Source: Macrostomum lignano
Taxonomy: Eukaryota
Assembly (NCBI GenBank): GCA_002269645.1
Contig: NIVC01004291.1
Span: 1-51,591 of the forward strand
Reading direction: 5' to 3'
Length of the DNA: 51,591 nt
The position numbers and the translations under genes are program-made. The notes under the pieces were generated by a model that ran no database searches, was not told the DNA's origin, and saw only the letters and a list, made by a program, of their open reading frames with translations. Positions 12,968 to 50,131 of this stretch are shown here, piece by piece (the first letter of the stretch is position 1; each line of letters opens with the position of its first letter).

Positions 12968-15900
12968 ATCTAGTAATTTCTTCCTGATCCTCAATGATTA
13001 CCTTGGTGAATGGGACTCGTGACATTCGGTCTTGAAACACGAGGGGGTTCAATCTGCACTCGGTGCACTTTCCTTAATCCTGCAGGTTGTCGTGCCGGCT
13101 GTGACGCAACCGCTGGGCCTGGCCGTAGACTGGGCAACCAACCTGCTGTTCTACATTGACAAGTGGCCTTGGCCGCGGCTGTGCGCCGTGTCGCTTGACC
13201 GACCAAGCCTCACTCGGACACTGCTTGTCTCGGACAGACTGTCCGGCGCTCGCGGCCTTGTGTTCGATTCTAACGTGTTCAGACTGTTCTGGATCGATAT
13301 TAAATATAAGGATCAGGGGCGGATCGACTGGTTGGGCTTTGTCTCCGTTGCCGCTCCGATGGATGTTGAGATTGAGACCGGCACCGTGCTCACCGGCCTG
13401 GGCGACCCCAGGTCAGACCGCTTTGCTCACTGCTGCTTCTGCCACTGAGTGATTGACACCCACTGACTGATTGTCTGACACCCACTGACTGATTGTCTGA
13501 CACCCACTGACTGATTGTCTGACACCCACTGACTGATTGTCTGACACTCACTGACTGATTGTCTGACACCCACTGACTGATTGTCTGACACCCACTGACT
13601 GATTGTCTGACACCCACTGACTGATTGGCTGGTTCCAACTGACTAAATGTCTGACCCCAACTGACTAAATGTCTGACACTAGTTGACTAAATGTCTGACC
13701 CCAACTGACTAAATGTCTGACACCCACTGACTGATTGTCTGACACTAGCTGACTAAATGTCTGACACCCACTGACTGATTGTCTGGTTCCAACTGACTAA
13801 ATGTCTGACACAAACTGACTAAATGTCTGACACAAACTGACTAAATGTCTGACCCCAACTGACTAAATGTCTGACACCCACTGACTGATTGTCTGACACT
13901 AGCTGACTAAATGTCTGACACAAACTGACTAAATGTCTGACACCCACTGACTGATTGTCTGGTTCCAACTGACTAAATGTCTGACACAAACTGACTAAAT
14001 GTCTGACACAAACTGACTAAATGTCTGACACTAGCTGACTAAATGTCTGACCCCAACTGACTAAATGTCTGACACCCACTGACTGATTGTCTGACACTAG
14101 CTGACTAAATGTCTGACACCAACTGACTAAATGTCTGACACCAACTGACTAAATGTCTGACACCAACTGACTAAATGTCTGACACCAGCTGACTAAAGGT
14201 CTGACCACCAACTGACTGATTGCCCCACCCCAACCACAGACACCTGGCCCTAGACCAGGCCTCGAGGCGGCTGTACTTCTCAGACGATAAGTCGGTCAAG
14301 TCGGTAACGTACGAAGGTCAGGAGTTGCGCACCCTGCCGCTGAGCGTGAAACCCGTTGGCGTGGCCTATCACAACTCCACTGTGCACTTCGTAGCCCTGA
14401 ACAGCCGCCGAATTCACCGGGTTCGAGTGTCGCCCGTCACCGGAGAATTCGTTGCTAACCGGGACGAGTTCGGATCGGGCTCGGTCGAGCTGCCCAGCGG
14501 ATTCCGGCCGATCAGTCTGATCCTGTTCGACACAGACTCGGCCAGGCCGCCCAATGCTGGCAATGCGCTTAAGACTCGCAATTTCTGCTTGCGCAACAGG
14601 TGCCAGCACTTCTGCCTGCTGACCAGGCAGCTGGAGATCGCCTGCGCCTGCTCTGATCTGCACAGGCGGGCGCCTGGCGACAGCGGCGGCTTCACTGAAC
14701 AGTGCGAACCGGTTAGCGACTGGCTGCACCTGGTCACGGATAAGGGCCTCACTATTGGCTACCCGGTGGGCTCGGTGAGTGCGCTTGCTATAGTATAGGT
14801 AGCATTATACGAGGGGCACTATTAAAGTTCTGAGCCTGACCAAGATCTTATAGTGGCAAAGTGTTGAAACTTTAGGCTCTAAAAGCGCCACATGTTAATA
14901 GTCTATTGTCAACTTTTCAGAATTTTCTGCATTCCCTAAGTCCCACTGCACCATTTTATTTCCAGCACCCCATGGCATTTTCTCAAGAATTGAAGCTTGA
15001 GCACAGGGCAGTGATTAAATTTCTGACTCTGGAGGGCTCAAAGCCTGCTGAAATTCAAAGCCGCATGGCTAGTGTGTACGCTGACGCTGCCCCCTCATAC
15101 GCCACCATAAAGCGCTGGGCAGCCGAGTTCAAGCGTGGCCGCGACTCGCTCGAAGATGACCCCCGATGTGGACGACCCCGGACTGCTGTCACTGCCGACA
15201 ACATCCAGCGCATCCAGGCTCTGGTTGACATTGACCAGCGGGTGAAAGTCAGGGAACTTGCGGCAGACACTGGACTCTCTGACCCGCAAGTCATTGAGAT
15301 CCTGCACCAGCATCTTCATCTGTCCAAGGTTTCTGCCAGATGGATCCCACGAATCTTGACAAGGGACCAAAAGACCGCACGGGTGCAGTACTCAAAGCTT
15401 GTCCTGGACTCCTACGATCCGGACCCTGCCAACTTTCTGTCCTGCTGCGTGACCGGGGATGAAACGTGGATCCATCACCACGATCCCGAGTCCAAGCAGG
15501 AGTCCAAGCAGTGGCTGCCAGTTGGTTCACCTGCACCACTGAAGGCACGGACTGCATGCAGTGCGGGCAAGATTATGCTCACCGTCTTCTGGGATGCCAA
15601 GGGCCCGCTGCTGCTGGACTTTCTACCGCACAAGCAGACAGTCACAGGCGCCTACTACGCTGACCTGATCGCCCGTCTGCGCGAAGCAATCAAGGAAAAT
15701 AGGCGAGGGATGCTGAGCCGAGGTGTTGTGCTGCTGCACGACAATGCGCCGGCCCACACTAGCAGGATTGCCAAGGCTGCTGTCAGTGTCGCAGGGTTTC
15801 GAGAACTGCCGCACCCAGCCTATTCACCAGACCTGGCCCCGAGCGACTTCCACCTGTTTCCACATCTCAAGCGGGCGCTCCGTGGACAGCGATTTGACAC

Positions 15901-18900
15901 TGATGATGCGCTGAAGGATGCTGCAACTGCTTGGTTTGAGGGCTGCTCGGTGCAATTCTTCCAGAGTGGCATTGAGGCGCTGCGATCAAGATGCCATAAG
16001 TGCATCTTGGTTGGGGGAGACTATGTTGAGAAAAGCTGATCTCACTTTGCCCATATCTCCTCTCTTTCATATTAAGGCTCAGAACTTTAATAGTGCCCCT
16101 CGTATAGTCCGTAAAAATTGCCTGAAAAATCACCATATACGCTCGTAATAATCGCCCTCAAAAATCGCCTTTGAGAATCGCCGTGGGATAATCGCCCTCA
16201 AAAATCGACTTTAAAAACCGCCTTTGAGAATCGCCATGGATAATCGCCTTTAAAATAGCCATGGAATAATCGCCCTTAAAAATCGCCCTTGAGAATCGCC
16301 ATGGAATAATCGCCCTCAAAAACCGCCTTTGAGAATCGCCATGTAATAATCGCCCTTGAGAATCGCCTTTGTGAATCGCCCTTTAAGAATCGCCCCAGCA
16401 TCCCCCAATTCGAATATTCGCTCCCGTCGAATCTCCAGGAAACGCCCTCGCAGCTCAGACAGTTCACCGTCTCGCAGCGGCCCGGCCTGCCCAGTGACAT
16501 CATCCGTGTCGAGTTGCTGCTGACCGACTCAATGGCGTCGGCCACTGCGGACTCCCCCAGCTCATCGGGGGTGTACTTTCTGTACCTTCGCCGTCGTGGC
16601 CCCGTGCTGCTGCACAACCCGGCCACGGGTGTCTGGCGCACTCTGATCCGCGGCCAGTTTCTCGACATGGCACTGGAACCGGTGAACCGGTTGCTGTACC
16701 TGGCCGAGGAGACCGCTATCGTTGCTCACCGGTTGGAGCCGCGGCTGTCATCAGCTTCATCTGCAGCCTCTCTGCCTGTTGAAGCGTCCGCTCTGCACTG
16801 GCTGATTCGCAACTGCAGCCTTGAGGCCTGCCGGCCCGTGGGCCTCGCCATTGACCCCTTGGCTGGCCATCTGTACTGGATGGACCGGGACTCCTCCGAC
16901 AGGACAGAGGAGGGCGCCCACCTGTTGCACCGGTGCCGACTGGATGGCACAGGGGAGACTCGACTCGACTCGATGGAATCAGAACTGCTCATGCGGCCGT
17001 CTAGCAGTTTGAGATTTCATTCGGGTATAACTCGCTGCCGGCCAATGGGGGCCGCCTCTGACTGTCCCCTCTCCGCCTCTCTCCACCCCCTCCCTCTCCG
17101 CCCTCCCTCTCCACCCCCTCCCTCTCCGCCCTCCCTCTTCGCCCCCTCCCTTTCTGGCCTCTCCCTCACGCCCTCCCTCTCCGCACTCTCCCTCTCTGGC
17201 CTCTCGCTCTCCGCCCTATCCCTCTCCGCCCTCTCCCTCTTCGCCCTCTCCCTCACGCCCTCCCTCTCCGCCTCTCTCCGCCCTCCCCCTCTCCGCCCTC
17301 CCTCTTCGCCCCCTCCCTTTCTGGCCTCTCCCTCTCCGCCTCTCTCCGGCCTCTCCCTCTCCGCCCTCCCTCTTCGCCCTCTCCCTCTCCGCCCTCCCTC
17401 TTCGCCCTCTCCCTCTCCGCCCTCTCCCTCTCCGCCCTCCCTCTTCGCCCTCTCCCTCTCCGCCCTCCCTCTCCGCCCTCCCTCTCCGCCCTCCCTCTTC
17501 GCCCTCTCCCTCTCTGGCCTCTCCCTCTCTGCCCTCTCCCTTACGCCCTCCCCCTCTCCGCCCTCACCCTCTCCGCCCTCTCCCTCTCCGCCCTCCCTCT
17601 GGCCTCTCCCTCTCCCCCTCCCCCTCTCCGCCCTCTTCCTCTCTCCGCTCTCCCCCTCTCCTTTTCCACGCAGAGTGTGGCAAGCACAGCAGGGGCCCAA
17701 TGAAAATATTCTCTATATCTCTATACCGGTTCAATCATTGCCAGTCACTGACTTTCCCACTGCTTGGCATCCCGCAGGCGGCTCCGGGGCCGGCCTGTAT
17801 TGGACCAGCAACCTCGGCGCAGTCTCCGGCAATCGGAATAACTGGGCCCTGCTGAAGCTGCAGCTACCGGCATCGATCACGCCTAGCAACGCCTCCCAGC
17901 TTCCCGCTGCTGTTCGCCCAATCGCCAATGTCCAGCTGGCAGGCCCGTACCGCAATGTCACTCCGTTCAGCCTCGGCGACGGTCGGGCCTACGTCCTGAA
18001 CTCGAGTCGTCAGATTAGCGTCTATAATTGCAAGGAAAAGGGGGCTTTGCCTCCGATACTTCTGCCTAGCGACCTGGGCCTGGATGCTGATAGGCCTGTG
18101 GTCACCGCTATGGTGAGTCCTTGCCTAACAATTACCTAATTGCCACCCGATAATCCCCCCCTGGTCACTTCCCAATAATCCTCCATTGGTCACTTCCCCG
18201 ATAATTCTCCCCCTAGTCACTTCCCCGATAATCCTCCCCCTGGTCACTTCCCCGATAATCCTCCCCCTGGTCACTTCCCCGATAATCCTCCCCCTGGTCA
18301 TTTCCCCGATAATCCTCCCCCTAGTCACTTCCCCGATAATCCTCCCCCTGGTCATTTCCCCGATAATCCTCCCCCTGGTCATTTCCCCGATAATCCCCCC
18401 TGGTCACTTCCCCGATAATTCTCCCCCTAGTCACTTCCCGATAATCCTCCCCTAGTCACTTCTCCGATAATCCTCCCCTAGTCACTTCCCCGAAAATCCT
18501 CCCCCCTGGTCACTTCCCCGATAATCCTCCCCCTAGTCACTTCCCGATAATCCTCCTTTAGTCACTTCTCCGATAATCCTCCCCTAGTCACTTCCCCGAT
18601 AATCCTCCCCCTGGTCACTTCCCCGATAATCCTCCCCCTGGTCATTTCCCCGATAATCCTCCCCCTAGTCACTTCCCCGATAATCCTCCCCCTGGTCACC
18701 TCCCCGATAACCCTCCCCCTGGTCATTTCCCCGATAATCCTTCATTGGTCACTTCCCCGATAATTCTCCCCCTAGTCACTTCCCCGATAATTCTCCCCCA
18801 AGTCACTTCCCCGATAATTCTCCCCCTAGTCACTTCCCCGATAATCCTCCCCCTAGTCACTTCTCCGATAATCCTCCCCCTAGTCACTTCCCCGATAATC

Positions 18901-21900
18901 CCCCCTGGTCACTTCCCAATAATCCTCCATTGGTCACTTCCCCGATAATTCTCCCCCTAGTCACTTCCCCGATAATTCTCCCCCTAGTCACTTCCCCGAT
19001 AATTCTCCCCCTAGTCACTTCCCCGATAATCCCCCCTGGTCACTTCCCAATAATCCTCCATTGGTCACTTCCCCGATAATTCTCCCCCTAGTAACTTCCC
19101 CGATAATTCTCCCCCTAGTCACTTCCCCGATAATTCTCCCCTAGTCACTTCCCCGATAATTCTCCCCCTAGTCACTTCCCCGATAATTCTCCCCCTAGTC
19201 ACTTCCCCGATAATCCCCCCTGGTCACTTCCCAATAATCCTCCATTGGTCACTTCCCCGATAATTCTCCCCCTGGTCACTTCCCAATAATTCTCCATTGG
19301 TCACTTCCCCGATAATCCCCCCTGGTCACTTCCCAATAATCCTCCATTGGTCACTTCCCCGATAATTCTCCCCCTAGTAACTTCCCCGATAATTCTCCCC
19401 CTAGTCACTTCCCCGATAATTCTCCCCCTAGTCACTTCCCCGATAATTCTCCCCCTAGTCACTTCCCCGATAATCCTCCCCCTAGTCACTTCTCCGATAA
19501 TCCCCCCTGGTCACCTCCCGGATAACCCTCCTTTTTCCGCTCCCGATAATCCGTGAGCATTAAATCAACTGCCTCACCGCCCGCCCAGGTTGCGGCCAGC
19601 ATCCCACAGCGCAGGTCTGTGCTGCAGTCAGGCTACGCAGCCAGCTGTCACCGCCTGTCCTGCAGTCACATTTGCCTGCCGCAGTCCCTGTCTGCTGCAT
19701 CATTAACTCTGCCTTCCTGCGCCTGTCCCAGCGGATTCGAGCTCAAGGACTCTGGTTCCTTTTCGCATACTCCACCCACCGTCTGCAGCCCGGCGCCGTT
19801 TACTTGCAGCCCACGCGAGTTCACCTGCCGGCGCCGGCGCCAGTGCGTCCCGCTGTCTGCGCTGTGCGACGGCCGGCCGGACTGTCACGACACCACCGAC
19901 GAGTCCTGCTGCGATCGGACGCGCGGCCTTCGCGACGTCAAGTCCCTGCCCTGTCGGGCGGTGAGTGAAGGGCGGCGAGATTTTTTCAGGGCTTCCAAAT
20001 GCGGCTCTTTGGAGCAATTGAAGTAGTCTAATCTTCATTAGGTAGCCATTTCAATTCTCTGTACGCCACAGAGAATGGCCACAGCCACAGAGAAAACACT
20101 TGCAGATCCCTATGCCTTAGATGCCTATCCCCCAGATGCCTATCCCCCAGATGCCTATCCCCCAGATGCCTATCCCCAGATGCCTATCCCCAGATGCCTA
20201 TCCCCCAGATGCCTATCCCCCAGATGCCTATCCCCCAGATGCCTATCCCCAGATGCCTTTCCCCAGATGCCTATCCCCCAGATGCCTATCCCCCAGATGC
20301 CTATCCCTATCCTCCAGATGCCTATCCATATCCTCCAGGTGCCTATCCCTATCTACTAGGCCCCTATCCTTATTCCCTCATGTCCAAATCCTCATTCCCC
20401 ATATCCAAATCCTCATTCCCATATCCAAATCCTCATTCCCATATCCAAATCCTCATTCCCCATATCCAAATCCTCATTATTAATATCCAAATCCTCATTC
20501 CCCATATCCAAATCCTCATTATTAATATCCAAATCCTCATTCCCCATATCCAAATCCTCATTATTAATATCCAAATCCTCATTCCCCATATCCAAATCCT
20601 CATTATTTATATCCAAATCCTCATTCCCTCATATCGAAGTCCCCATTCCCAGTTCCCAGGCTAAACACAAATCCATAAATCATAAATTTATTCCTGTCAT
20701 TTCTCCAGCAAATTTCCGGCCGGCCTCAGTGCCTGGCGCTGGCCCTCTGGTGCGACGGCGCGCCCCAGTGCTCCGACGCCTCGGACCAGAGCGAGGCCTT
20801 GTGCTCCGAATCTGTCGTCACAGAATCTCGCGTTGCTGAGGCGGCCGCTGCTGCGGAGGCCGCCGAAGCGTCGGGCTTGGCGCCTTCGTCGAAGCCGCCG
20901 ATCGGCCATCCTGGCGATGCCTCCGCAGGCATGATGAGCGGCCACGGCGTGTTCGTCTACCTGCTGGTGCCGCTGCTGATTGGCGTCGTGGTGCTGCTGC
21001 CGCTGCTGGGCTACTGCTGCACCCGGGACAAGCCGGCCCTGCGGCTGCACGTGCCCGAGATGGCCGAGATGCGCCCCCTGCCAGCCTCGGCCACTGGCGG
21101 GGCCTCGCGGGCTGCAGCCGCCGCTTCTGTGCGCGATGACAAGGATCCCGAAACGATGGACGACGAAGATGATGATGCAGGCGATGGCGACGACGACGAC
21201 GAACTGGACTTTGACGACGATTTCGACCACCAACAGCAGCTGCCGCGCTGTCGAAGCAAGGAGGACCTGTCGTCTGTGGCTACGTCGGCCGCGGCCGCCG
21301 CCGCTCGAGCAGCGTCCAGTTCGAAGTCGTCCAACTCGATGTCCAGCCAGCAGCAGCAGCAGCTGTGCGAGTACGTGGAAACCCTGAACCCGCCGCCGAG
21401 CCCGTGCACCGACTGCTCCAGCCTGCCAGGCGCCGCGGCCGCCGCCGCCAGATTTCACGACTTCGACGACGCCAGTCGGAGCGGCAGCGATGCGGCAGCG
21501 GCATTTTATTATTCCAATAATAATCATTTTGCATCTCGGCATCGGCGCCAGCGGGGCAGCAGCGGCGGCAGCGGCGAGCAGCAGCAGGAGCTGCTGGTGC
21601 ATCAGCAGCACCAGAGGCATAGCGGCAGTCGGAGACGGAGACGCCGTCAGCGCAGTCGGTCGCGGGCCGCCGCCGCTGCCGCCCCGGCCGCCTCCGCTAG
21701 CGGCGTCGCCGGTCGCCGAGCGCCAGTCTCTTTGATCGCGCCGCCTTACGATTCTCCCTACCACCAGCTGCAGCCTCAGCCTCAGCCTCCTCGTCAGCCT
21801 CGCCAGCACCATCGGCAGCACAGGTCCGCCGGCGGGGCGGCAGTTCGGCATCTTCTAGCTTGGTTGCTATGCGCTCCCCGCCAGCCTATCAGAATCCGCC

Positions 21901-28500: not shown

Positions 28501-31154
28501 GTTCTTGAACTAAAACGAGTGAAAACAAAAAAATTCAATCCTGCAGAAAGTCAACTTTCTGGCCTGCTTCGATTTGATCGCACCCAGAGTTCGAGACGGT
28601 GAGTTGCTCGTTGATATAAATCTGTTCTGGCGCACACTTGCTATTCGTAAATAGTGCTCAGTTCAGGTAGTGTAGAGTGCTCAGTTCAGGTAGTGTAGAG
28701 TGCTCAGTTCAGGTAGTGTAGAGTGCTCAGTTCAGGTAGTGTAGAGTGCTCAGTTCAGGTAGTGTAGAGTGCTCAGTTCAGGTAGTGTAGAGTGCTCAGT
28801 TCAGGTAGTGTAGAGTGCTCAGTTCAGATAGTGTAGAGTGCTCAGTTCAGGTAGTGTAGAGTGCTCAGTTCAGGTAGTGTAGAGTGCTCAGTTCAGGTAG
28901 TGTAGAGTGCTCAATTCTCAGATATTATGCATGCGGCATATGTATCAAGTCGTAAAATTCCCGTTATTAAAAAATCGCGCTCTTAACGCAACGACAGGCT
29001 ATTTTTGTCCCGTGTTTCCAAAGGACTTTTTGTTTCAAATTGGATTTTAGATCAATATTTTAGTTTATGGGAAGATCTACGTGACTTTGACTACTTAAAC
29101 CATCATCGAATAAATCTTTCCCAATCATTCCGAGAATCTCCTCAGATCAGCCCAATAATCTTCCCTATATCATCCCGAGAACCTCCCCAGATCAGTCCCA
29201 TAATCATCCGTAAATCATCCCGAGAACCCCAGATCAGTCCAATAATCATCCCTAAATCATCCCGAGAACCCCAGATCAGTCCAATAATCATCCCTAAATC
29301 ATTCCGAGAATCTCCCCAGATTAGTCCAATAATCATCCCTAAATCATCCCGAGAACCTCCCCAGATCAGTCCAATAATCATCCCGAGAATCTCCCCAGAT
29401 CAGTCCAATAATCATCCCTAAATCATCCCGAGAACCTCCCCAGATCAGTCCAATAATCATCCCTAAATCATCCCGAGAATCTCCCCAGATCAGTACAATA
29501 ATCATCCCAATAATCATCCCGAGAACCTCCCCAGATCAGTCCAATAATCATCCCAATAATCATCCCGAGAACCTCCCCAGATCAGTCCAATAATCATCCC
29601 TAAATCATCCCGAGAATCTCCCCAGATTAGTCCAATAATCATCCCTAAATCATCCCGAGAACCTCCCCAGATCAGTCCAATAATCATCCCGAGAATCTCC
29701 CCAGATCAGTCCAATAATCATCCCTAAATCATCCCGAGAACCTCCCCAGATCAGTCCAATAATCATCCCTAAATCATCCCGAGAATCTCCCCAGATTAGT
29801 CCAATAATCATCCCTAAATCATCCCGAGAACCTCCCCAGATCAGTCCAATAATCATCCCTAAATCATCCCGAGAATCTCCCCAGTCCCCAGATTAGTCCA
29901 ATAATCATCCCTAAATCATCCCGAGAATCTCCCCAGATCAGCCCAATAATCATCCCGAGAATCTCCCCAGATCAGTCCAATAATCGTCCTTAAATCAAAT
30001 CTAGAATCTCCCCCAGATCAGCCCAGTTATCTTTTCTATCGTACCTTAAAAATCTTAACTTTTAGTTGCTATCAAGAGCATCTCGAGTGTTCCGAGATTC
30101 TTCCTCGAACATTCCATTGAACCTGACAACTTTCCGTATTGTTGAGTCCAGAGAATTATTTTAGAATTCATGAAGGTCTTGAAACTACCACTAGAACTTT
30201 CCAAAACGACAAAACGTACTTTATCTCGGCTTCGCAGATGTGGTAGACGCCAAGTCCAGTCCTCGCCGTCGCAAACAGCTGGTGAATCCTGACTTTCCGC
30301 TTGTATCGTCGACGACCTCGGCGACTGCGACTACGGCTTCGACTGCGGTTGCAGCTGCTACCCCTGTCACTGCGACGATTTCTGCCAAGCCTCAGCTTCA
30401 GCAACAGCAGCAGCCGGCGCCCTCGGCCGGCCATTCTAATGGTCTCGTTGCCACTGGCAACGGAGCTGGAATTCTGACTCGATCATCTCGTCGGGCTTGT
30501 CGCTTCGAGGAAAAGCCGTCATTTAGTCTTTTACAACAACAACAGCAGCAGCAGCAGCAACAGAAGCGAAAGCCTCAATTCTGCTGCGCCAAGTGTCACC
30601 AGTTAATGCCAAATCGACCCGTTCGGGCACCGTTGTCGTCGGTGGCAACAATTGGCCAAGCAGCGTCTGCTGCGCCCGCCAGTTCTTGGTGTCCAACCTG
30701 CATTGCTTCTTGCGCTGCAACCGCTGACATCGCCATCGGCCTGCCGTGCTGTCCGCCATCGACCCCGGCTAGTAGCGGCAGTGGTGAGTCATGGGCCGAA
30801 CTCTTATCAGTTTTCTGATTGTTGTAATGAGGTTACCCACATTATTTCTTATCGATCGCTTTATGTAGATGTACATTGGTTTACCCACCTCACTCCATTT
30901 TTTATCGATCGCAAGGTCTACAGTGACTAAACCCACCAATTTGCGCAGGAAATCAGTCAACTGGTTCGACAACAAGCGACAAGTCACCGAAGCAGGATCC
31001 CAATGAATCATTTGAGTTCATTCTGCCCTTGGGCCGAATTCGACGGTCTGAAAAGAACTTGCGACTTGAGAGCCTGTTAAGTAAACTAAGCCGGAATAAT
31101 AGTCACAATAGCGACAACAACAAAGACGGTGTAAGCCGCATTAACGGCCAGTGA
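25512..31154 (+). CDS. Uncharacterised multi-exon protein (helical N-terminal part, Ser/Thr/Ala- and poly-Gln-rich region, CxxC...CxxC)
   Basis: Phase-compatible exons 27473-27562, 27935-28048, 28547-28598, 30238-30783 and 30949-31154 (stop TGA 31152-54). Exon about 27165-27384 needs a 1-bp correction at 27246-48. The 5' exon 25512-25634 is tentative. No family recognised. Confidence 0.65.
26286..27163. repeat. Intronic minisatellite, 36/37-bp unit (gaggcactgagggcacaggggcactgac[t]tgccaatt)
   Basis: About 24 tandem copies. Confidence 0.95.
27672..27903. repeat. Pyrimidine-rich low-complexity repeat (atctctccc-type)
   Basis: Inside intron 27563-27934. Confidence 0.8.
28103..28395. repeat. Intronic minisatellite, about 30-bp unit (cttcaggtgtgggtgccgcc...)
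   Basis: About 10 diverging copies. Confidence 0.85.
28654..28913. repeat. Intronic minisatellite, 23-bp unit (gtgctcagttcaggtagtgtaga), about 11 near-perfect copies
   Basis: Head-to-tail copies with no spacers. Confidence 0.95.
29115..30025. repeat. Intronic minisatellite, variable unit of about 42-45 bp (ccccagatcagtccaataatcatccctaaatcatcccgagaa..)
   Basis: Tandem copies in intron 28599-30237. Confidence 0.9.
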
Positions 31155-42937: not shown

Positions 42938-43591
42938 ATGAACTTGATTTCTGAAAGCAGCATGCAGCACAGCGACAAAGACGGTTTAGAAGACTTCGCC
43001 GATTCTCAGCACTCGCCATCAAGCGACTACTATGAAGATGGTTTCATCGTTGCAGACTTTGCGGTGTACAACAGCAGCAGCAGAGTGGTCGACGGGAAAT
43101 TTGGTCATCAGAGTGGGGATCAGGCGAGCATCGGGATCTCCTGCGCCCAGTGCAAGAAGCCGTTCTATTCTACCCGAGCGCTGAAGCAGCACGCTAGCCG
43201 AGAGCACAGCTCTGCAGCCAGACCGTTCGTCTGCGATCGGACTGACTGCCGCAAGGCCTTCAAAACTCGGTTCGGACTAAAGCGTCACTCGATGTCGCAT
43301 TCGAACGAACGGCCGTTCAAATGCGACATCTGCGGCCGCGGCTTCCTGGAGAAGGGCCACCTGCAGGTGCACCGTCGGATTCACTCCGGCGAGCGGCCGT
43401 ACAAGTGCCGCCACTGCGACTGCAGCTTTGCTCACAAGCCGCACGCGGTTGAGCACGAGCGAATCCACAGCGGTGAACGCCCGTTCGAGTGTCGTCAGTG
43501 CGGCCGGGCTTTCAAACGGCTGACGCATCTGCGCAATCATGAGAAACGCTTGCACAGGGCGGGCGCTACGGCTGATGCTGCACTGAGCTAG
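42938..43591 (+). CDS. C2H2 zinc-finger protein (5 fingers), single coding exon, 217 aa
   Basis: Fingers CAQC..H..H, CDRTDC..H..H, CDIC..H..H, CRHC..H..H and CRQC..H..H with HSGERP-type linkers. AATAAA at about 43628. Confidence 0.92.
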
Positions 43592-44163: not shown

Positions 44164-46089
44164 ATGGGTTCCAGCATGGCTCAAGCAGCTCACCAGACCG
44201 CCGAGTTGGACTCAACAATCGATGGTGCCGCCTACCTGATCGACTTTCAGGAGCGCCCGTTCTCCAACGGCAGCTGCCGCTTGGCATTTCAGGGCGTCTA
44301 CCGGGGCCGGGGGCCGCTGAACGGCAAGCGCTGCGTCGCCAAGGTGGCCATCGCGACATGTCGCCACGGCGGTGCCCTGGCAGACTACGAAGCCGACATG
44401 CAGGCCAGCAGGAAGGCGGGCAAGCTGGCCGAGCTGTTCAACAAGGAGTTCGTCAGCTCCAAGCCACTGCGGTTTGTGCAGCCAGCGATGGCCACCGTGC
44501 TGACCACTGGCAGCTGCTACTCGCGACGTGGCGACAAAATCCTTGTTGAAGAGTTCATCGAGGGCAGGTACGAGAAGTTCAACAACAATGCCCACTACCA
44601 GAGCGACGAGGTGGCCACCGTGCCCTGCTTCTCGCACTACACCTACTACAAGACTGGCGGCAGGTATCTCGTCTGCGACATCCAGGGCGTCAGGACTTCG
44701 CGAGGATACTGGCTGACTGACCCGGCGGTGCACAGCCGGGAGGGCGGCAAGTTCGGCGACACCGATTTGGGCAGAGACGGCTTCGTGCGGTTCTTCAGCA
44801 GCCACCGCTGCACCAGCGTCTGCATCCTGTTCCCCATCTCGGATTTGAAGTGAGTTGCGTAACTGGCTGCAGCATCCGCCTCTTCAGTCAGTTTTGTCTG
44901 TCACTTTTCTGTCACGCTCTGCCTCTCATTCCTTACTCCTCGCTGCACCTCTCTCCTACCTTCCCCTTCTCTCTTCCCTCCCCTTTCCCTCTCTGCCCTC
45001 CCCTCTCCCTCTCTGCCCTCCCCTCTCCCTCTCTGCCTTCCCCTCTCCCTCTCTGCCCTCCCGTCTCCCTCTCTGCCCTCCCGTCTTGCTATCTCTGCCT
45101 TCCCTCTCTGCCCTCCCGTCTCCCTCTCTGCCCTCCTTCTCTGCCCTCGCCTCTCCCTCTCTGCCCTCCCCTCTGACTCTCTGCCCTCCCCTGTCCCTCT
45201 CTGCCCTCCCCTCTCCCTCTCTGCCCTCCCGTCTCCCTCTCTGCCCTCCCCTCTCCCTCTCTGCCCTCCGTCTCCCTCTCTGCCCTCCCTCTCCCTCTCT
45301 GCCCTCCCGTCTCCCTCTCTGCCCTCCCGTCTCCCTCTCTGCCCTCGCCGCTCCCTCTCTGCCCTCCCCTGTCCCTCTCTGCCCTCCCTGTCTCTCTCCC
45401 TCTCCATCTCTCCCCTACCCTCTCCCTCTCCCCCACTCCCTCTCTCCCCTCTCTACCTCTCCTTCCCTGCATCTGTGTCTTTCTTTCCCTTCAATTTATC
45501 TCACTCTATCTCTTTCTTGCCATTCCAGTTGATTTAAAAATCAGCTTGTCAACTGCCATTGCTAATTTTCTGTGTCAAATCTTTCTCTATTCACTGTCAC
45601 AGCCTCCGTTCTGCACTCCATCACAATTATTTATCCCCAAATCATTGCATTCCCATCGCATCCCCTAGAGCCGGCCAGGACCTGCCAGAGGCGAGCTTCA
45701 ACCTGACCCGCAAGAACTACTGCGGCCGTCGCCTGAACGGCCCTCCCTGCGACTGCTGCGACGGCTCCTGCGGCCCCAGGAACGGCTGCAACTGCTGCGG
45801 CTGCATGCGCAGAGACCTTGAGGAGTTCGGCCTGCTCAAAATTCGAGCCTTAGTCAATCGGGAAGGCGCGGTCTCCAGACTGAGCAGCGAGACTAACAAA
45901 TTCTACTGCGGCAGGAAGAACATGGCTCGGGACCGCATGACTGACGGCTTCTGCGGCCCCAACAACGGCAACAACTGCCACGCCTGCCGCCAGCTCGACA
46001 TCCAGTCCAGGGACCGCTACTATCTCATTGTGCAGGCCTGGTTCGGCAAGGCCCTGCCAGAGCCCACCTCCATTGTGCACAGGGCCTGA
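44164..46089 (+). CDS. Alpha-kinase (eEF2K/MHCK family) with two C-terminal Cys-rich repeats, 368 aa
   Basis: Exons 44164-44849 and 45669-46089 (phase 2). Alpha-kinase motifs: FSNGSCRLAF, VAK, EEFIEGRYEKFNNN, FSHYTY, LVCDIQGV, LTDPAVHS, FGDTDLGRDG, FFSSHRCTSVC. Exon 2 has two YCG...DGxCGPxNGxNCxxC repeats. Confidence 0.92.
44945..45470. repeat. Pyrimidine-rich minisatellite (ctctccctctctgccctccc)
   Basis: Fills the alpha-kinase intron. Core similar to 17066-17662. Confidence 0.9.
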
Positions 46090-46094
46090 CCGCC

Positions 46095-46462
46095 TGACAC
46101 CACTAGCTGACGGCATATAGACCTGACTGACACCCTACAACCCTACCTGACACCCCATTGACCTAACTGACACCCATTGACCTAACTGACACCCTATTGA
46201 CCTAACTGACACCCCATTGACCTAACTGACATCCCATAGACCTAACTGACACCCCATAGACCTGACTGACATCCCACAGACCTAACTGACATCCCATTGA
46301 CACCCCATAGACCTAACTGACACCCCATTGACACCCCATAGACCTAACTGACACCCCATAGACCTAACTGACACCCCAAAGACCTGCCTGACATCCCATT
46401 GACCTGACTGACATCCAATAGACCTAGCTGACATCCCGTAGACCTACCAACTGACACCCCTC
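46095..46462. repeat. Minisatellite of about 20 bp (gacctaactgacaccccata)
   Basis: Starts immediately after the alpha-kinase stop codon. Confidence 0.9.
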
Positions 46463-47062
46463 AGACTAACTGCAGCCGCATTATTTACGCTTTGCAACTG
46501 GCGCCATCCTTCAATCCATTAGGAATTGAAAAGCAATCCACCAGCCATTTCATCTTTGAATTATAACAAAATTTCGCACTCGTTTCTACAATTTCAAATT
46601 GGCACACTGGCACCCGGACATAGGCATATTGTTTACATTGAATGGCGCTCGCACACTAATTTTGTCAGTCTGAATTAATTCTAATTCAGATTTGCTATTT
46701 TGTACCTTTGCTGAGTTGCACTTTTCCGGTAATATTCTTTGTTTTGTGTAGTTAAACCTTATAGCAGTGTAAATACTACATTTATGCATACTGTGATTTT
46801 AATGTCTGATTAACAACTTTTATGGGCTGCTGTCGCAGTTTGCTAAATCGGTGTTTATTTATCATTTATTGCGGCAAACTTATCTGGTACCCAAGGCCGA
46901 TTTACCAATAAACTATTTTAACCCAATCAGTACGATTTCTATGGCAAAATTTTCACTACACTACTGTCAAGTAGAAATGTGCGAATTTTTCTGTGAGAGA
47001 AAGAATTAGCGAATGAAGACAGGAACTTCTCTTAAATTTAGGAAAAGTACAGTAAGACCACT

Positions 47063-47494
47063 GGCACACCTATTCAAGCATCTCTGACACACCTATTCAA
47101 GCACCTCTGACACACATATTCAAGCATCTCTGACACACATTTTCAAGCACCCCTGACACACCTATTCAAGCATCTCTGACACACCTATTCAAGCATCTCT
47201 GACACACCTATTCAAGCACCTCTGACACACCTATTCAAGCATCTCTGACACACATTTTCAAGCACCCCTGACACACCTATTCAAGCATCTCTGACACACC
47301 TATTCAAGCATCTCTGACACACCTATTCAAGCACCTCTGACACACCTATTCAAGCACCCCTGGCACACCTATTCAAGCATCTCTGACACACCTATTCAAG
47401 CACCTCTGACACACATATTCAAGCACCCCTGGCACACCTATTCAAGCATCTCTGACACACCTATTCAAGCACCCCTGACACACCTATTCAAGCA
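47063..47494. repeat. 23-bp minisatellite (gacacacctattcaagcatctct)
   Basis: About 19 copies. Confidence 0.95.
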
Positions 47495-48003
47495 CAATTG
47501 AAGCAGCTCTGAACATGAGTTTAGATATAATTAGATATAATATAATATTTTGGCTGCCAGAAAGACAAGTCAGCCTTTCTTCCTGACCTCCACTTATGCA
47601 GAACTAGCAAATCCCGTACCGCATGGACTACTGCGCATTGCCGCTTGGACTGGAAGCCCGGCCAAAATTCTAAGCCCTTAATTTGGGCGTGCCAGACGTC
47701 CATGACCTGTGCGTACAGCCTGCGAGCGGCGAGGGAGAGGTGGGGGAGGAGGAAAGGACAGCCAGGAAATCGATAAGCGGATGCGAAACCCCTCGCCCCA
47801 ACCCCGCAGCCACCCCCGCAAGTCTACCGCCCCAATGTCTACTAGAAGACAGGCTAGAATGAGATTTCTTCCTAGCGGACGCGTTGCAGCTCTCTGCCCT
47901 CGCTCTGTACGCGGCTGCAGCCCCCCAAAGCTGGTTGCTCATCCGTGCTTATATCCAAGCCCCCGCCAGCAGGTCAAGCACTGACTGACTTGCCAGGATC
48001 AGC

Positions 48004-50131
48004 ATGGAAGACTCCGGCTGGAAGGTCGGCCTGTGCAGCGCGGCCACCGGCAAGTTCCTGACGGCCGAGCCATTCGGCTTCAAGCTGAACGTGTCCGCCA
48101 GCTCGTTGAAGAAGCGCCAGACCTGGACTCTGGTGCCGGACGCGCACACGGAGTCATTCGTGGCCCTGCGCTCGCACCTGAATCGCTACCTGTCCGCTGA
48201 CAAGGACGGCAACGTGACCGCCTGCGCCGAGTCGGTGGACACCGAGGAGCGCTTCGCCGTCGAGTATTCCTCAGAAGGGGGAGCTCGCCTGGCCCTGAGG
48301 AGCGTCCTGCACGGCTGGTACTTCAGCGGCGAGGGGGACCAGGTGCGGTGCTTCGCCCGGTCGCCAGTCTGGTGGAAGTGCCAGCTGGCGCTGCACCCGC
48401 AGGTGCACCTGAAGAATCTCAATCGGGGTCGCTACCTGCGGCTGGGCGACGGCGAGATCTCCGGCGACCGGGTCAACCCCTGGGGCGCTGAGAGTCTCAT
48501 CACGCTGATGCAGTCTGTCGACGGCCGAGTGGCCATTCGGGCATCGGACGGGAGCTACCTGAGCCGGACTGGCGAGCTCTCAGCAGAGATGTCCGAGGAG
48601 GTGCTGCTCAGCCCTGAGTTCCACTGCGGTGCGCGCCCGGCCTGGCGTTCAAGGTGAGCTGGAGATCGGGATGCGGTGAGGATGTGATCAGGATGTGATC
48701 AGAATGTGATCAGGATGTATTCAGGATGCGGTGAGGATGTGACGAGAATGCGGCGAGGATATGATGAGAATGTGATATGGATGAGACGAGGATACAGTGA
48801 AGATGCGGTAAGGATGGGATAAAAATTAGGCTGAGGATGATTAGCAAGTTCTTAGACCTTCAAACGGATTGCTATTAAAATCATGGAGCTTTTAGGTGAT
48901 TCAATAGAAGGACTTCCAGAGCGCACCCTGCTCGAACTCTCTCCCACCCATGAATTTGTGCCTAGTAATGAACTCAATCAGCACAACCCATTGCCATTGC
49001 TTAAACGCAGGACTCAAACGGCCGCTACCTCACCAACACTGGGTCCAGCGGCACCACCAAAACAAAAAACCAGAACGTCACGAAGGACGAACTGTTTGTC
49101 CTGGAGGCCAGCTACCCGCAGGTGGCAGTCAAAGCTTTCAACGGCCGCTACGCCAGCGTCAAGCAGGGGGAGCACTCTGAGCTCAACTTGCACCCAAGCT
49201 GATCTTCTGGGCTGAGTCATCGCGTGGCTGGGAGAGAGATTAGCTAGAGTAGGATTTAGGATTAGGACCCGGAGTTCCCCTTGCTAAAGCCTATTTATGG
49301 TTCCCAGAGCCGGGGGAGTGCGCAGAAGCTGACGGAATTTGCTATTTTTGAACTTCTGCTTGGGAAATACAGGGCGAATCCCTTGCCTAACTTTGCTACT
49401 GCTAGTAGAAATACACGATTTTTATCTTTTATTTCTCCTTTAAACAAGATTTCGAAGAGGGAAATATGTGGGATTGATATGAGTTGTACCGAGTAGATGT
49501 GATAGACGAGATTGGAATAGATATGATATAGATGAGAGTGGAATAGATCTGATATAGATGAGAGTGGAATAGATCTGAGATAGATGAGAGTGGAATAGAT
49601 CTAAGATAGATGAGAGTGGAATAGATCTGAGATAGATGAGAGTGGAATAGATCTGAGATAGATGAGAGTGGAATAGATCTGAGATAGATGAGAGTGGAAT
49701 AGATCTAAGATAGATGAGAGTGGAATAGATCTGAGATAGATGAGAGTGGAATAGATCTAAGATAGATGAGAGTGGAATAGATCTGAGATAGATGAGAGTG
49801 GAATAGATCTGAGATAGATGAAAGTGGAATAGATCTGAGATAGATGAGAGTGGAATAGATCTGAGATAGATGAGAGTGGAATAGATTTGAGGTCGCAGGT
49901 CCGACTCGGGTTCAAGTAGATCGACTCGCAGATTGCAGAAAAAGTCCATATTTGATGATGCTTCCCTATAGGTCAGGACTTGAACGTGAACCAGAGCGAG
50001 ATCGAAGCCACGGAGACCTACCAGCTGGAGTTCGTGTCCTCGACTGGCAAGTGGCGATTTCGAACCAAGGACGACAAATTCTGGCGATTGTCCGCCGTGG
50101 CTAACGGAGTCAACGCTTCCGGGGATGCGGG
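48004..50131 (+). CDS. FSCN: Fascin (actin-bundling, singed/FSCN family), 5' three exons; continues past the window
   Basis: Exons 48004-48653, 49011-49167 and 49972-50131. Motifs: [24 protein letters not shown] (PKC-site region), [31 protein letters not shown]|[25 protein letters not shown]|QDLNVNQ, ETYQLE. Needs a 1-bp correction at 48636-38. The second donor reads GG. Confidence 0.93.
48670..48830. repeat. Degenerate repeat of about 11 bp (gatgtgatcag-type)
   Basis: In fascin intron 1. Confidence 0.6.
49497..49888. repeat. 26-bp minisatellite (gatagatgagagtggaatagatctga)
   Basis: About 15 copies in fascin intron 2. Confidence 0.95.

What the first reader, a model, noticed from the sequence alone, without database searches (positions are those of the whole stretch)
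44164..46089. Minimal alpha-kinase fused to tandem Cys-rich DGxCGPxNGxNCxxC repeats
Seen: the kinase starts almost at the N-terminus with no eEF2K SEL1, vWA, WD40 or TRPM channel parts. It is followed by two repeats: YCGRRLNGPPCDCCDGSCGPRNGCNCCGC and FYCGRKNMARDRMTDGFCGPNNGNNCHAC. From memory, unverified, this repeat resembles an uncharacterised Cys-rich module in HECTD4-like E3 ligases. Skipping the splice gives a kinase-only product ending at 44853. Known: animal alpha-kinases include eEF2K, TRPM6/7 and ALPK1-3, and ALPK1 is an innate-immune sensor. Inference: a new alpha-kinase architecture with a putative zinc-binding sensor or targeting module.
Basis: partly seen in the sequence, partly recalled or inferred. 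Interest (0 to 1): 0.7.

Follow-up and report, generated by a model that had tools for sequence, protein, structure and literature searches.

The report
Alpha-kinase fused to E3-ligase zinc module
A flatworm (Macrostomum lignano) gene joins a small, apparently active alpha-type protein kinase to a two-part cysteine-rich, probably zinc-binding module copied from the worm's own RING ubiquitin-ligase genes. The combination was found in no other organism searched, and the module belongs to a widespread domain family that no library names.

Summary
Exon 1 (44164-44849) and exon 2 (45669-46089), joined across a GT..AG phase-2 intron, give a 368-aa protein. It is identical to the deposited M. lignano protein PAA47919.1, whose annotation was built from RNA-seq.

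- **Kinase:** residues 35-220 match Pfam Alpha_kinase (E 1.6e-42), with the catalytic and zinc-site residues intact.
- **Tail:** two homologous ~50-aa cysteine units (BLASTP E 1e-8; profile-profile E 1.4e-18) carry 12 family-conserved Cys.
- **No known match for the tail:** Pfam, NCBIfam, PDB sequences and Foldseek on a confident model (pLDDT 86) all found nothing.
- **Family size and partners:** 947 clusters at 50% identity. Most partners are RING + Sina/TRAF zinc-finger E3 ligases. Rarer ones are Ras/Roc, a conventional kinase, MACPF, astacin, PHD and a ubiquitin-like domain. No HECT was seen.
- **Origin:** the tail nests inside M. lignano's RING-Sina paralogues (bootstrap 498/500). In one of them it is also a phase-2 terminal exon.
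- **Relatives:** the closest kinases are small 'MG...' alpha-kinases without this tail.

This is therefore a lineage-specific exon capture. That the module targets the kinase or binds a partner is inference. The HECTD4 link is unsupported, and the 'kinase-only isoform' is a generic property of the splice donor.

The parts
44164..44849 (+). Exon 1 (CDS, 686 nt, ends in phase 2): residues 1-229, starting MGSSMAQ and containing the whole alpha-kinase domain
   Evidence: translation, donor GAA|GTGAGT. (100% identity to the deposited 368-aa protein). GC3 is 0.84, like the neighbouring genes.
44266..44823 (+). Alpha-kinase catalytic domain (aa 35-220). Key residues: K60 (44341-44343), E129, catalytic D172 (44677-44679), Q174, D186 (44719-44721), Gly-rich loop DLGRDG (aa 201-206), and C-lobe zinc site H158, H214, C216, C220
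   Evidence: Pfam PF02816 E 1.6e-42. PDB relatives are EhAK1 4kuj, eEF2K, MHCK-A and TRPM7. These positions are at least 90% conserved among 80 relatives and are present in the query. Their roles follow the TRPM7 numbering in PMC2827801. The full-length model matches alpha-kinase structures at Foldseek E 2.6e-5.
44850..45668 (+). Intron (819 nt, GT..AG, phase 2). It is largely a CT-rich 20-nt minisatellite (44969-45468). The TGA at 44851-44853 is in frame if the intron is retained
   Evidence: Intron length varies between the three genomic copies (819, about 805 and 681 nt) while the splice sites are kept.
45669..46089 (+). Exon 2 (terminal coding exon, including the stop): linker, two Cys-rich units and a C-terminal helix. 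It has no ATG of its own upstream of the first unit
   Evidence: GC3 is 0.86. DNA similarity to the terminal exon of the RING paralogue P0003 covers only the coding core 45710-46020 (76% over 315 nt).
45706..45825 (+). Cys unit A (aa 242-281, TRKNYCGRRLNGPPCDCCDGSCGPRNGCNCCGCMRRDLEE). It has 8 family-conserved Cys (247, 256, 258, 259, 263, 269, 271, 274), enough for two Zn sites. It lacks the N-terminal 'N..G..ARLG' hairpin of the family consensus
   Evidence: (invariant and near-invariant Cys).
45850..46005 (+). Cys unit B (aa 290-341, LVNREGAVSRLSSETNKFYCGRKNMARDRMTDGFCGPNNGNNCHACRQLDIQ). It has a beta-hairpin and 4 conserved Cys (309, 324, 332, 335), enough for one Zn site. The CxxC opens a helix
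   Evidence: (AF2 strands at tail residues 60-62 and 68-71, helix 104-113; pLDDT 93-96 for tail residues 41-90, 88-95 for 91-120).
46006..46086 (+). C-terminal helix with the family-conserved RY (aa 342-353), then an 18-aa extension specific to this gene (low pLDDT)

Best explanation
Shown:
- The locus is a two-exon Macrostomum lignano gene encoding a 368-aa chimeric protein.
- Its N-terminal 229 residues are a complete alpha-kinase domain, with all residues needed for ATP/Mg binding, catalysis and the structural zinc site.
- The kinase belongs to a clade of small alpha-kinases whose domain starts at the N-terminus. Most of them begin with Met-Gly.
- Its C-terminal exon encodes a tandem pair of homologous ~50-residue cysteine units with 12 conserved Cys. 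These belong to a large, unnamed eukaryotic domain family.
- That family normally sits at the C-terminus of RING + Sina/TRAF zinc-finger proteins.
- The kinase's copy derives from M. lignano's own RING-Sina paralogues.
- The ordinary short C-terminal peptide of the kinase clade (K/R-x-N-T-A/S-Y-T/V-F) is absent here, and the module sits in its place.

Inferred:
- The units bind three zinc ions.
- The module is a recognition or docking domain. In the E3 ligases it occupies the place of the SIAH/TRAF substrate-binding domain.
- Fused to the kinase, it brings phosphorylation to the partner or site that the paralogous E3 ligases recognise.
- The N-terminal Gly may be myristoylated, which would place the enzyme on membranes.
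For: Gene model:
- Splice, phase and ORF.
- Identical to GenBank and UniProt proteins from two assemblies, and intact in three genomic copies.
- The GenBank annotation was derived from RNA-seq transcript assemblies (PMC5730564).
- GC3 is equal in both exons and similar to neighbouring genes.

Kinase:
- Pfam E 1.6e-42.
- PDB alpha-kinase hits.
- Conserved K60, E129, D172, Q174, D186, H158, H214, C216, C220, G203, G206.
- Structural matches to MHCK-A, eEF2K, TRPM7 and EhAK1.

Module:
- Internal repeat E 1e-8 pairwise and 1.4e-18 profile-profile.
- 947 family clusters in the exhaustive search; the query scores 158 bits, E 1.2e-41.
- AF2 pLDDT 85.9, pTM 0.77.
- Partners are mainly RING (26 of 121) and Sina_ZnF (20 of 121). 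Rarer partners are Ras/Roc, Pkinase, TPR, MACPF_SNTX, astacin, PHD and ubiquitin-like.

Origin:
- The tail is 69% (aa) and 74% (nt) identical to the P0003 tail (dN/dS 0.45), and dN/dS is 0.14 against P0004.
- The M. lignano trio is monophyletic in 498 of 500 bootstraps.
- The P0003 tail is also a phase-2 terminal exon.
- Only the M. lignano proteins combine both domains.
- The nearest kinase, P0002 (56% identity), is a transcript that ends in a stop and a 3'UTR without the module.
- The MG start and the shared C-terminal motif of the relatives are visible.
Against: - No direct experimental data were seen here: no reads across the junction, no protein, no activity and no metal content.
- The three genomic copies are about 99% identical (3 synonymous and 2 non-synonymous differences), so their integrity says little about selection.
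- dN/dS of 0.45 against the closest donor paralogue fits relaxed constraint after the capture.
- Unit A lacks the family's N-terminal hairpin, so the captured module may be partly disabled.
- The full-length AF2 model has pLDDT below 50 for residues 175-240 and pTM 0.52. It says nothing about how the domains are arranged.
- The module's function is unknown in every protein that carries it. No solved structure or paper touches it.
- Placing the kinase near vWKa-type kinases rests on similarity scores, not on a formal phylogeny.
Confidence: 0.55

Rival explanations
1. The module is a homotypic adaptor, as Death, TIR or CARD domains are. It binds copies of itself, so the kinase is recruited into complexes with the RING-Sina E3 paralogues and the other carriers rather than to a substrate.
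For: One shared C-terminal module is attached to many unrelated effector domains: RING, Pkinase, alpha-kinase, Ras/Roc, MACPF_SNTX, astacin, PHD and a ubiquitin-like domain. It also exists as many stand-alone small proteins. The kinase's module is closest to those of E3s in the same genome.
Against: Nothing here tests self-association. Tandem zinc units with a conserved basic and aromatic surface are equally typical of ligand or peptide readers. The AF2 model is monomeric and says nothing on this point.
Confidence: 0.2
2. It is a young chimeric gene with little or no function of its own. The captured exon is tolerated and drifting, and the protein acts simply as a minimal alpha-kinase.
For: The architecture is confined to one species in the searched data. 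dN/dS is 0.45 against the closest paralogue tail. Unit A is N-terminally truncated relative to the family. The genomic copies are too similar to show constraint.
Against: All 12 family-conserved Cys and the other near-invariant positions are retained after dS of about 0.56. The ORF and splice sites are intact in all three copies. The clade's usual C-terminal motif is absent from the protein and the locus, so the tail is the only C-terminal region the protein has.
Confidence: 0.12
3. The cysteine module is an intramolecular regulator, for example a redox- or zinc-sensitive switch that gates the kinase, rather than a targeting domain.
For: 13 Cys lie in 139 residues next to a kinase that itself needs a structural zinc site. 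The relatives carry a different conserved C-terminal peptide that could be a regulatory or autophosphorylation site. The module takes its place.
Against: The same module works with many unrelated catalytic and non-catalytic partners, and alone. That argues for an autonomous function, not a kinase-specific regulator. No confident inter-domain packing was predicted.
Confidence: 0.08
4. It is a gene-model artefact. Exon 45669-46089 belongs to another transcript, and the real product is the 229-aa kinase ending at 44853.
For: No Logan transcript contig encodes exactly this 368-aa protein (sources). The in-frame TGA immediately follows the donor.
Against: The exon has no start codon of its own before the first Cys unit. 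Phase and frame fit exactly. The same 368-aa model comes from two assemblies and annotations, and from three loci. The GenBank annotation is transcript-derived. No upstream gene on this strand lies between the kinase and the exon. There is no poly(A) signal in the intron.
Confidence: 0.05

Closest known systems
Small N-terminal alpha-kinases and vWA-alpha-kinases (Dictyostelium vWKa type; 'alpha-protein kinase vwkA-like' of sponges and nematodes)
   Same: These are the best-scoring kinase relatives: P0002 56%, P0184/P0186/P0189 35-37% aligned from residue 1, and the VWA_4 + Alpha_kinase protein P0180 36.5%, 124 bits. Catalytic and zinc-site residues are the same.
   Different: There is no vWA domain. 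The kinase is N-terminal rather than C-terminal as in vWKa. The C-terminal K/R-x-N-T-A/S-Y-T/V-F peptide of the small relatives is replaced by the Cys module.
Entamoeba histolytica EhAK1 (PDB 4KUJ), eEF2K, Dictyostelium MHCK-A, TRPM7 kinase domain
   Same: Same alpha-kinase fold and active-site residues, with 50-69 bits by sequence. These are the top structural matches.
   Different: None of their accessory parts is present: SH3, the calmodulin-binding region and SEL1 repeats, the coiled coil and WD40, or the ion channel. Sequence identity is low.
ALPK1 (vertebrate ADP-heptose sensor)
   Same: An alpha-kinase domain joined to a non-catalytic domain that could in principle sense or bind something.
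   Different: It is the weakest PDB relative (33.7 bits). ALPK1's kinase is C-terminal, behind a large helical ligand-binding domain. Here the kinase is N-terminal and the accessory domain is a small Cys module. No evidence of ligand sensing was found.
SIAH / TRAF-type RING E3 ligases (RING + Sina/TRAF zinc fingers + C-terminal substrate-binding domain)
   Same: The module's usual carriers have RING followed by Sina_ZnF or zf-TRAF. The module then sits where SIAH and TRAF carry their substrate-binding beta-sandwich.
   Different: The kinase has neither RING nor Sina zinc fingers. The module shows no detectable sequence or fold similarity to the SIAH SBD or MATH domain.
HECTD4-like HECT E3 ligases
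   Same: Only the general link to the ubiquitin system.
   Different: No HECT domain occurs among the 121 best representatives of the module family, and none of those proteins exceeds 838 aa. A direct comparison with HECTD4 was not possible.

Membership tests
Alpha-kinase family (Pfam PF02816) | Profile match over the whole domain, above the curated threshold | tested here: met
   146.2 bits against a cutoff of 21.3, E 1.6e-42, profile positions 2-185 of 185.
Alpha-kinase family (Pfam PF02816) | Invariant Lys and the two Asp that position ATP/Mg (K1648, D1767, D1777 in human TRPM7), plus the Gln after the catalytic Asp | tested here: met
   K60, D172, Q174 and D186 are present. They lie at columns at least 90% conserved in 80 relatives. 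Their roles are taken from PMC2827801. The mapping rests on family alignment, not on a residue-by-residue alignment to TRPM7.
Alpha-kinase family (Pfam PF02816) | C-lobe zinc-finger motif (His...His-x-Cys-x3-Cys) and the Gly-rich loop near the C-terminus | tested here: met
   H158, H214, C216 and C220, and D-L-G-R-D-G (G203, G206), are all conserved.
Alpha-kinase family (Pfam PF02816) | Alpha-kinase fold | tested here: met
   The full-length AF2 model hits 38 alpha-kinase chains (MHCK-A, eEF2K, TRPM7, EhAK1) at E <= 6.5e-4. The next hits are above E 0.1. The C-lobe (residues 175-240) was predicted poorly.
Alpha-kinase family (Pfam PF02816) | Ser/Thr phosphotransfer activity | not testable with these tools
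   Needs an in-vitro kinase assay.
vWKa-type alpha-kinases | N-terminal von Willebrand A domain with a C-terminal kinase | tested here: not met
   No VWA match. The kinase begins at about residue 20 of 368. Relatives such as P0180, P0199, P0203 and P0204 do carry VWA_4.
eEF2K / MHCK / TRPM6-7 / ALPK1-3 | Their accessory parts: calmodulin-binding region + SEL1 repeats; WD40 or coiled coil; TRPM channel; large N-terminal regions | tested here: not met
   Alpha_kinase is the only Pfam hit at E <= 10. The protein is 368 aa.
Unnamed tandem Cys module family (defined here by profile A2) | Two units of [VN..G...R.G..GK]-[FY]YCG-x(n)-DGxCGPxxGxxCxxC-xLD. Unit A has four extra Cys (C-x-CC ... GCNC). 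The family-conserved RY follows. | tested here: met
   The query scores 158.4 bits, E 1.2e-41, in the exhaustive search. All invariant Cys are present. Unit A lacks the N-terminal hairpin motif.
Unnamed tandem Cys module family (defined here by profile A2) | Zinc binding (three Cys4 sites expected) | not testable with these tools
   Inferred from 12 conserved Cys, intracellular partners (RING, kinase, Ras) and the absence of a signal peptide. Needs metal analysis.
RING-Sina/TRAF zinc-finger E3 ligases carrying the module | N-terminal RING finger and Sina_ZnF/zf-TRAF | tested here: not met
   Both are absent from the kinase protein and present in the paralogues and most family members. The kinase shares only the module.
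HECTD4-like HECT ligases | The module co-occurs with a HECT domain | tested here: not met
   No HECT family appears in the families shown for the 121 best representatives (25 of 52 shown), nor in the 10 longest proteins scanned one by one. Only the top 150 of 947 hits were visible, and HECTD4 itself was not available, so a distant single-unit occurrence cannot be excluded.

The most novel reading that the evidence does not exclude
The tandem Cys module is a new zinc-stabilised fold. It acts as a common adaptor or sensor that wires RING E3 ligases, kinases (conventional and alpha), small GTPases, a MACPF pore-former and proteases into one signalling network, possibly for immunity or stress. The network would exist in small invertebrates (rotifers, flatworms, cnidarians, molluscs), chytrids and ciliates. 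The M. lignano alpha-kinase would be a recently recruited effector arm of that network.
Probability: 0.15. Interest if true: 0.75.

Novelty: new variant of a known kind. Interest (0 to 1): 0.45.

Why it matters
Alpha-kinases are few, and what each one does is set by its accessory domains: a channel in TRPM7, SEL1 repeats in eEF2K, a sugar sensor in ALPK1. This gene is a clean, datable case of a new accessory domain gained by capture of a terminal exon from an E3-ligase paralogue, in an animal where transgenesis and RNAi are available.

The work also exposes a sizeable eukaryotic domain family (about 950 clusters at 50% identity). It has no Pfam or NCBIfam model, no solved or matching structure, and no mention in the searched literature. 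It is tied mainly to RING/SIAH-like ubiquitin ligases.

A defined function for the module would annotate hundreds of proteins. It might also reveal a kinase-E3 partnership acting on a shared target. If the module proves to be only a generic zinc-stabilised spacer, the finding is a minor curiosity of one polyploid flatworm genome.

Tried and rejected
1. **HECTD4/HECT link.** Pfam scans of the 121 best family representatives and of the 10 longest showed RING, Sina and TRAF domains but no HECT. Rejected as far as it could be tested.
2. **Known zinc-finger families.** Pfam at E <= 10 on 10 isolated tails gave nothing consistent. NCBIfam, a PDB profile search, and Foldseek against PDB and BFVD gave only chance-level hits with E above 1. 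These included irrelevant toxin-protease and CTCF-like entries.
3. **Literature search for the motif strings** (DGYCGP, CGPTNG and others) returned 0 papers. 'Alpha-kinase' + 'Macrostomum' returned nothing relevant.
4. **Remnant of the ancestral C-terminal peptide** (K/R-x-N-T-A/S-Y-T/V-F) in the intron or downstream: no tblastn hit above noise.
5. **Shared flanking DNA between the kinase's tail exon and the P0003 tail exon,** to find the capture mechanism. Only the coding core is similar (45710-46020, 76%). Flanks and repeats are not.
6. **Selection test between the three genomic copies.** Only 5 differences, so uninformative.
7. **Full-length AF2 for domain packing.** The C-lobe and linker have pLDDT below 50 and pTM is 0.52. 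This is probably an alignment-quality problem, and it was not interpreted. An earlier combined alignment (A6) misaligned the tails onto the Gly-rich loop and was discarded.
8. **Recent horizontal transfer of the kinase.** It has a spliceosomal intron and GC3 of 0.84-0.86, like the neighbouring genes (0.71-0.87). No sign of transfer.
9. **Taxonomy of the nearest small alpha-kinases.** Their contigs are unnamed ENA/Logan assemblies, so the organisms remain unknown.
10. **The first Biopython bootstrap run timed out**. It was redone with a numpy neighbour-joining script.
Full report
**1. Source and gene model**

The window is the entire 51,591-bp contig NIVC01004291.1 of the Macrostomum lignano assembly GCA_002269645.1.

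- The ATG is at 44164, preceded by an in-frame stop 26 codons upstream.
- The donor is GAA|GTGAGT after 44849 and the acceptor CCCCTAG|A before 45669.
- The intron is phase 2 and the stop is at 46087-46089.
- The CDS is 1107 nt and encodes 368 aa.

This protein is 100% identical to GenBank PAA47919.1/PAA71503.1 (BOX15_Mlig023966g1/g2) and to UniProt A0A1I8IM49 from an earlier assembly. A third locus, PAA92188.1, differs by two residues.

The GenBank annotation of this assembly was made from RNA-seq-guided transcript assemblies (StringTie/TACO plus a mapped de novo transcriptome; PMC5730564). The join of the two exons therefore rests on transcript evidence, although I inspected no reads myself.

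Several other facts support the join:
- Exon 2 has no ATG before the first Cys unit.
- GC3 is 0.84 in exon 1 and 0.86 in exon 2, against 0.71 and 0.87 in the flanking genes.
- All three genomic copies keep the splice sites, although intron length varies (819, about 805 and 681 nt).

The three copies are about 99% identical, as expected from the duplicated DV1 karyotype. Their integrity is therefore not evidence of selection.

**2. The kinase**

Residues 35-220 match Pfam Alpha_kinase end to end (E 1.6e-42), and nothing else matches.

PDB relatives by sequence are:

| Protein | Bits |
|---|---|
| Entamoeba EhAK1 (4kuj) | 68.7 |
| eEF2K | 68 |
| MHCK-A | 57 |
| TRPM7 | 49.7 |
| ALPK1 | 33.7 |

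An AF2 model hits 38 alpha-kinase chains, and everything after them is far weaker.

The review PMC2827801 lists the essential residues: the ATP-binding Lys, two Asp, the C-lobe zinc-finger Cys, and the Gly-rich loop. Their counterparts here are K60, D172, D186, H158/H214/C216/C220 and G203/G206. All lie at columns at least 90% conserved in 80 relatives, and all are present. I conclude that the enzyme is probably active; this is inferred.

The nearest relative is P0002 (56% identity). It is a 1.4-kb transcript contig from an unnamed organism that ends in a stop and a 3'UTR with no Cys module.

Next come small proteins of 257-308 aa that align from residue 1 (P0184, P0186, P0189, P0194; 35-37% identity). 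After them come vWA + alpha-kinase proteins and a sponge 'vwkA-like' entry.

- Four of these five small relatives, like the query, start with Met-Gly. This suggests N-myristoylation (inference).
- P0002, P0184 and P0189 share a C-terminal K/R-x-N-T-A/S-Y-T/V-F peptide that the M. lignano protein lacks.
- No remnant of that peptide is detectable in the locus.

**3. The Cys-rich tail**

- Pairwise, the two units are 45% identical over 40 aa (E 1e-8).
- Family profiles of unit A and unit B align with 99.1% probability and E 1.4e-18.
- The full unit is about 50 aa: a beta-hairpin (VN..G...R.G..GK), then [FY]YCG, a variable loop, DGxCGPxxGxxCxxC, and a helix starting at the CxxC (xLD).
- Unit A carries four extra conserved Cys (C-x-CC and GCNC).
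- In total 12 Cys are conserved across 68 diverse sequences. That is enough for three Cys4 zinc sites (inferred).
- In the M. lignano proteins the first hairpin of unit A is degenerate.

With a 68-sequence alignment, AF2 gives pLDDT 85.9 and pTM 0.77. Foldseek finds nothing in the PDB (best E 2.7) or in BFVD (best E 1.6).

Pfam, NCBIfam and a profile search of PDB sequences also find nothing. No paper in the library contains the motif strings.

**4. The family and its partners**

A word-indexed profile search found 149 proteins. The exhaustive HMM search of 1.84 billion cluster representatives found 947 at E <= 1e-3, and 104 at E <= 1e-30.

Named sources are:
- bdelloid rotifers (Rotaria, Didymodactylos);
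- the mollusc Lottia;
- the jellyfish Rhopilema;
- the ciliate Halteria;
- the chytrids Cladochytrium and Obelidium;
- an unclassified eukaryote.

Many members are stand-alone proteins of 120-230 aa.

Among the 121 best representatives, the dominant partners are RING fingers (26) and Sina_ZnF (20) or zf-TRAF (3), with the module C-terminal. Rarer partners are:
- Ras/Roc (3);
- a conventional protein kinase (P0281);
- TPR + RING + Sina_ZnF (P0226);
- MACPF_SNTX + DUF7656 (P0292);
- astacin (P0272);
- PHD (P0306);
- a weak ubiquitin-like domain (P0032).

No HECT domain was seen. The module is thus mobile, mostly C-terminal, and linked chiefly to the ubiquitin system. It sits where SIAH and TRAF proteins carry their substrate-binding domain.

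**5. Origin of the fusion**

- The kinase's tail is most similar to the tails of two M. lignano RING-Sina paralogue groups: P0003 (69% aa, 74% nt, dS 0.56, dN/dS 0.45) and P0004 (dN/dS 0.14).
- In a neighbour-joining tree of 68 tails, the three M. lignano tails form a clade in 498 of 500 bootstraps. The kinase tail is sister to P0003 in 413 of 500.
- In the P0003 gene the tail is also a separate terminal exon entered in phase 2, the same phase as in the kinase gene. P0004 is a single coding exon.
- DNA similarity between the two tail exons is confined to the coding core, 45710-46020. The linker, the last 18 codons and the flanks are unrelated.

The simplest reading is a lineage-specific capture of a P0003-like terminal exon by a minimal alpha-kinase gene, so that the module now takes the place of the kinase's original C-terminal peptide.

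**6. Mechanism**

Shown: an intact alpha-kinase catalytic core is tethered by a linker of about 20 residues to a conserved tandem Cys module that is otherwise carried mainly by RING/SIAH-like E3s.

Inferred:
- The module binds zinc and mediates recognition of a protein or ligand.
- The kinase thereby acts on, or next to, whatever the paralogous E3s recognise.
- An N-terminal myristoyl group may add membrane association.

Rivals are a homotypic adaptor function, an intramolecular regulatory role, a young and largely neutral chimera, and (unlikely) a gene-model artefact. None can be separated without experiments.

**7.

- The observation and the splice model are correct.
- The 'new architecture' claim stands for the databases searched, although the protein sequence itself is already deposited as a hypothetical or alpha-kinase-domain protein.
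- The HECTD4 recollection is not supported. The E3 connection is to RING-Sina/TRAF proteins.
- The 'kinase-only isoform' follows automatically from a phase-2 GTGAGT donor. It has no independent support, and there is no poly(A) signal in the intron.
- The ALPK1 analogy is only conceptual.

**8. Verdict**

This is a real feature: a new variant of a known kind, namely an alpha-kinase with a novel accessory domain. The uncatalogued module family is the more general by-product. Interest is moderate. No step in this work touched anything that needed referral.

Noticed in passing
window 44969-45468: The intron of the kinase gene is mostly a CT-rich minisatellite with a 20-nt unit (CTCTCTGCCYTCCCCTCTCC), about 21-25 copies. 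Intron length differs between the three genomic copies (819, about 805 and 681 nt).
   Followed up: partly
window 46117-46472 and 47057-47495: Two more tandem arrays lie just downstream of the stop codon: a 20-nt unit ATAGACCTAACTGACACCCC (about 18 copies) and a 23-nt unit (19 copies, 90% matches). The first canonical AATAAA is at 46907, between them.
   Followed up: no
window 42938-43591 (+): A single-exon ORF of 217 aa with C2H2 zinc fingers lies 570 bp upstream of the kinase on the same strand. It is called as a gene and sits in the same position at all three loci.
   Followed up: partly
window 48004-48657 (+): An ORF with a Fascin/FRG1-like domain lies downstream of the kinase. The same neighbour is present at the other two loci (L002, L006), so the three loci are syntenic duplicates.
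   Followed up: partly
window 14906-16036 (+): An ORF of 377 aa matches the Mos1/mariner-type transposase domains (Transposase_1, DDE_3, HTH_48), so a mariner-like element lies in the contig.
   Followed up: no
proteins P0002, P0184, P0189 (relatives; L004, L009): The small alpha-kinases nearest to the query share an N-terminal MG(N/T) start and a C-terminal K/R-x-N-T-A/S-Y-T/V-F peptide. This may be a conserved regulatory or autophosphorylation motif of an undescribed 'minimal' alpha-kinase clade.
   Followed up: partly
protein P0292 (838 aa, ENA metagenome) and P0272 (559 aa): The Cys module also occurs behind a stonustoxin-type MACPF domain + DUF7656, and as six repeated units behind an astacin protease fragment. 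These architectures hint at roles beyond ubiquitin ligases.
   Followed up: no
window 17001-21000 and 29001-30000: These stretches show strong strand compositional skew (GC skew down to -0.57, GC up to 0.67) together with long ORFs on both strands and no Pfam hits. They are probably further low-complexity satellite blocks.
   Followed up: no
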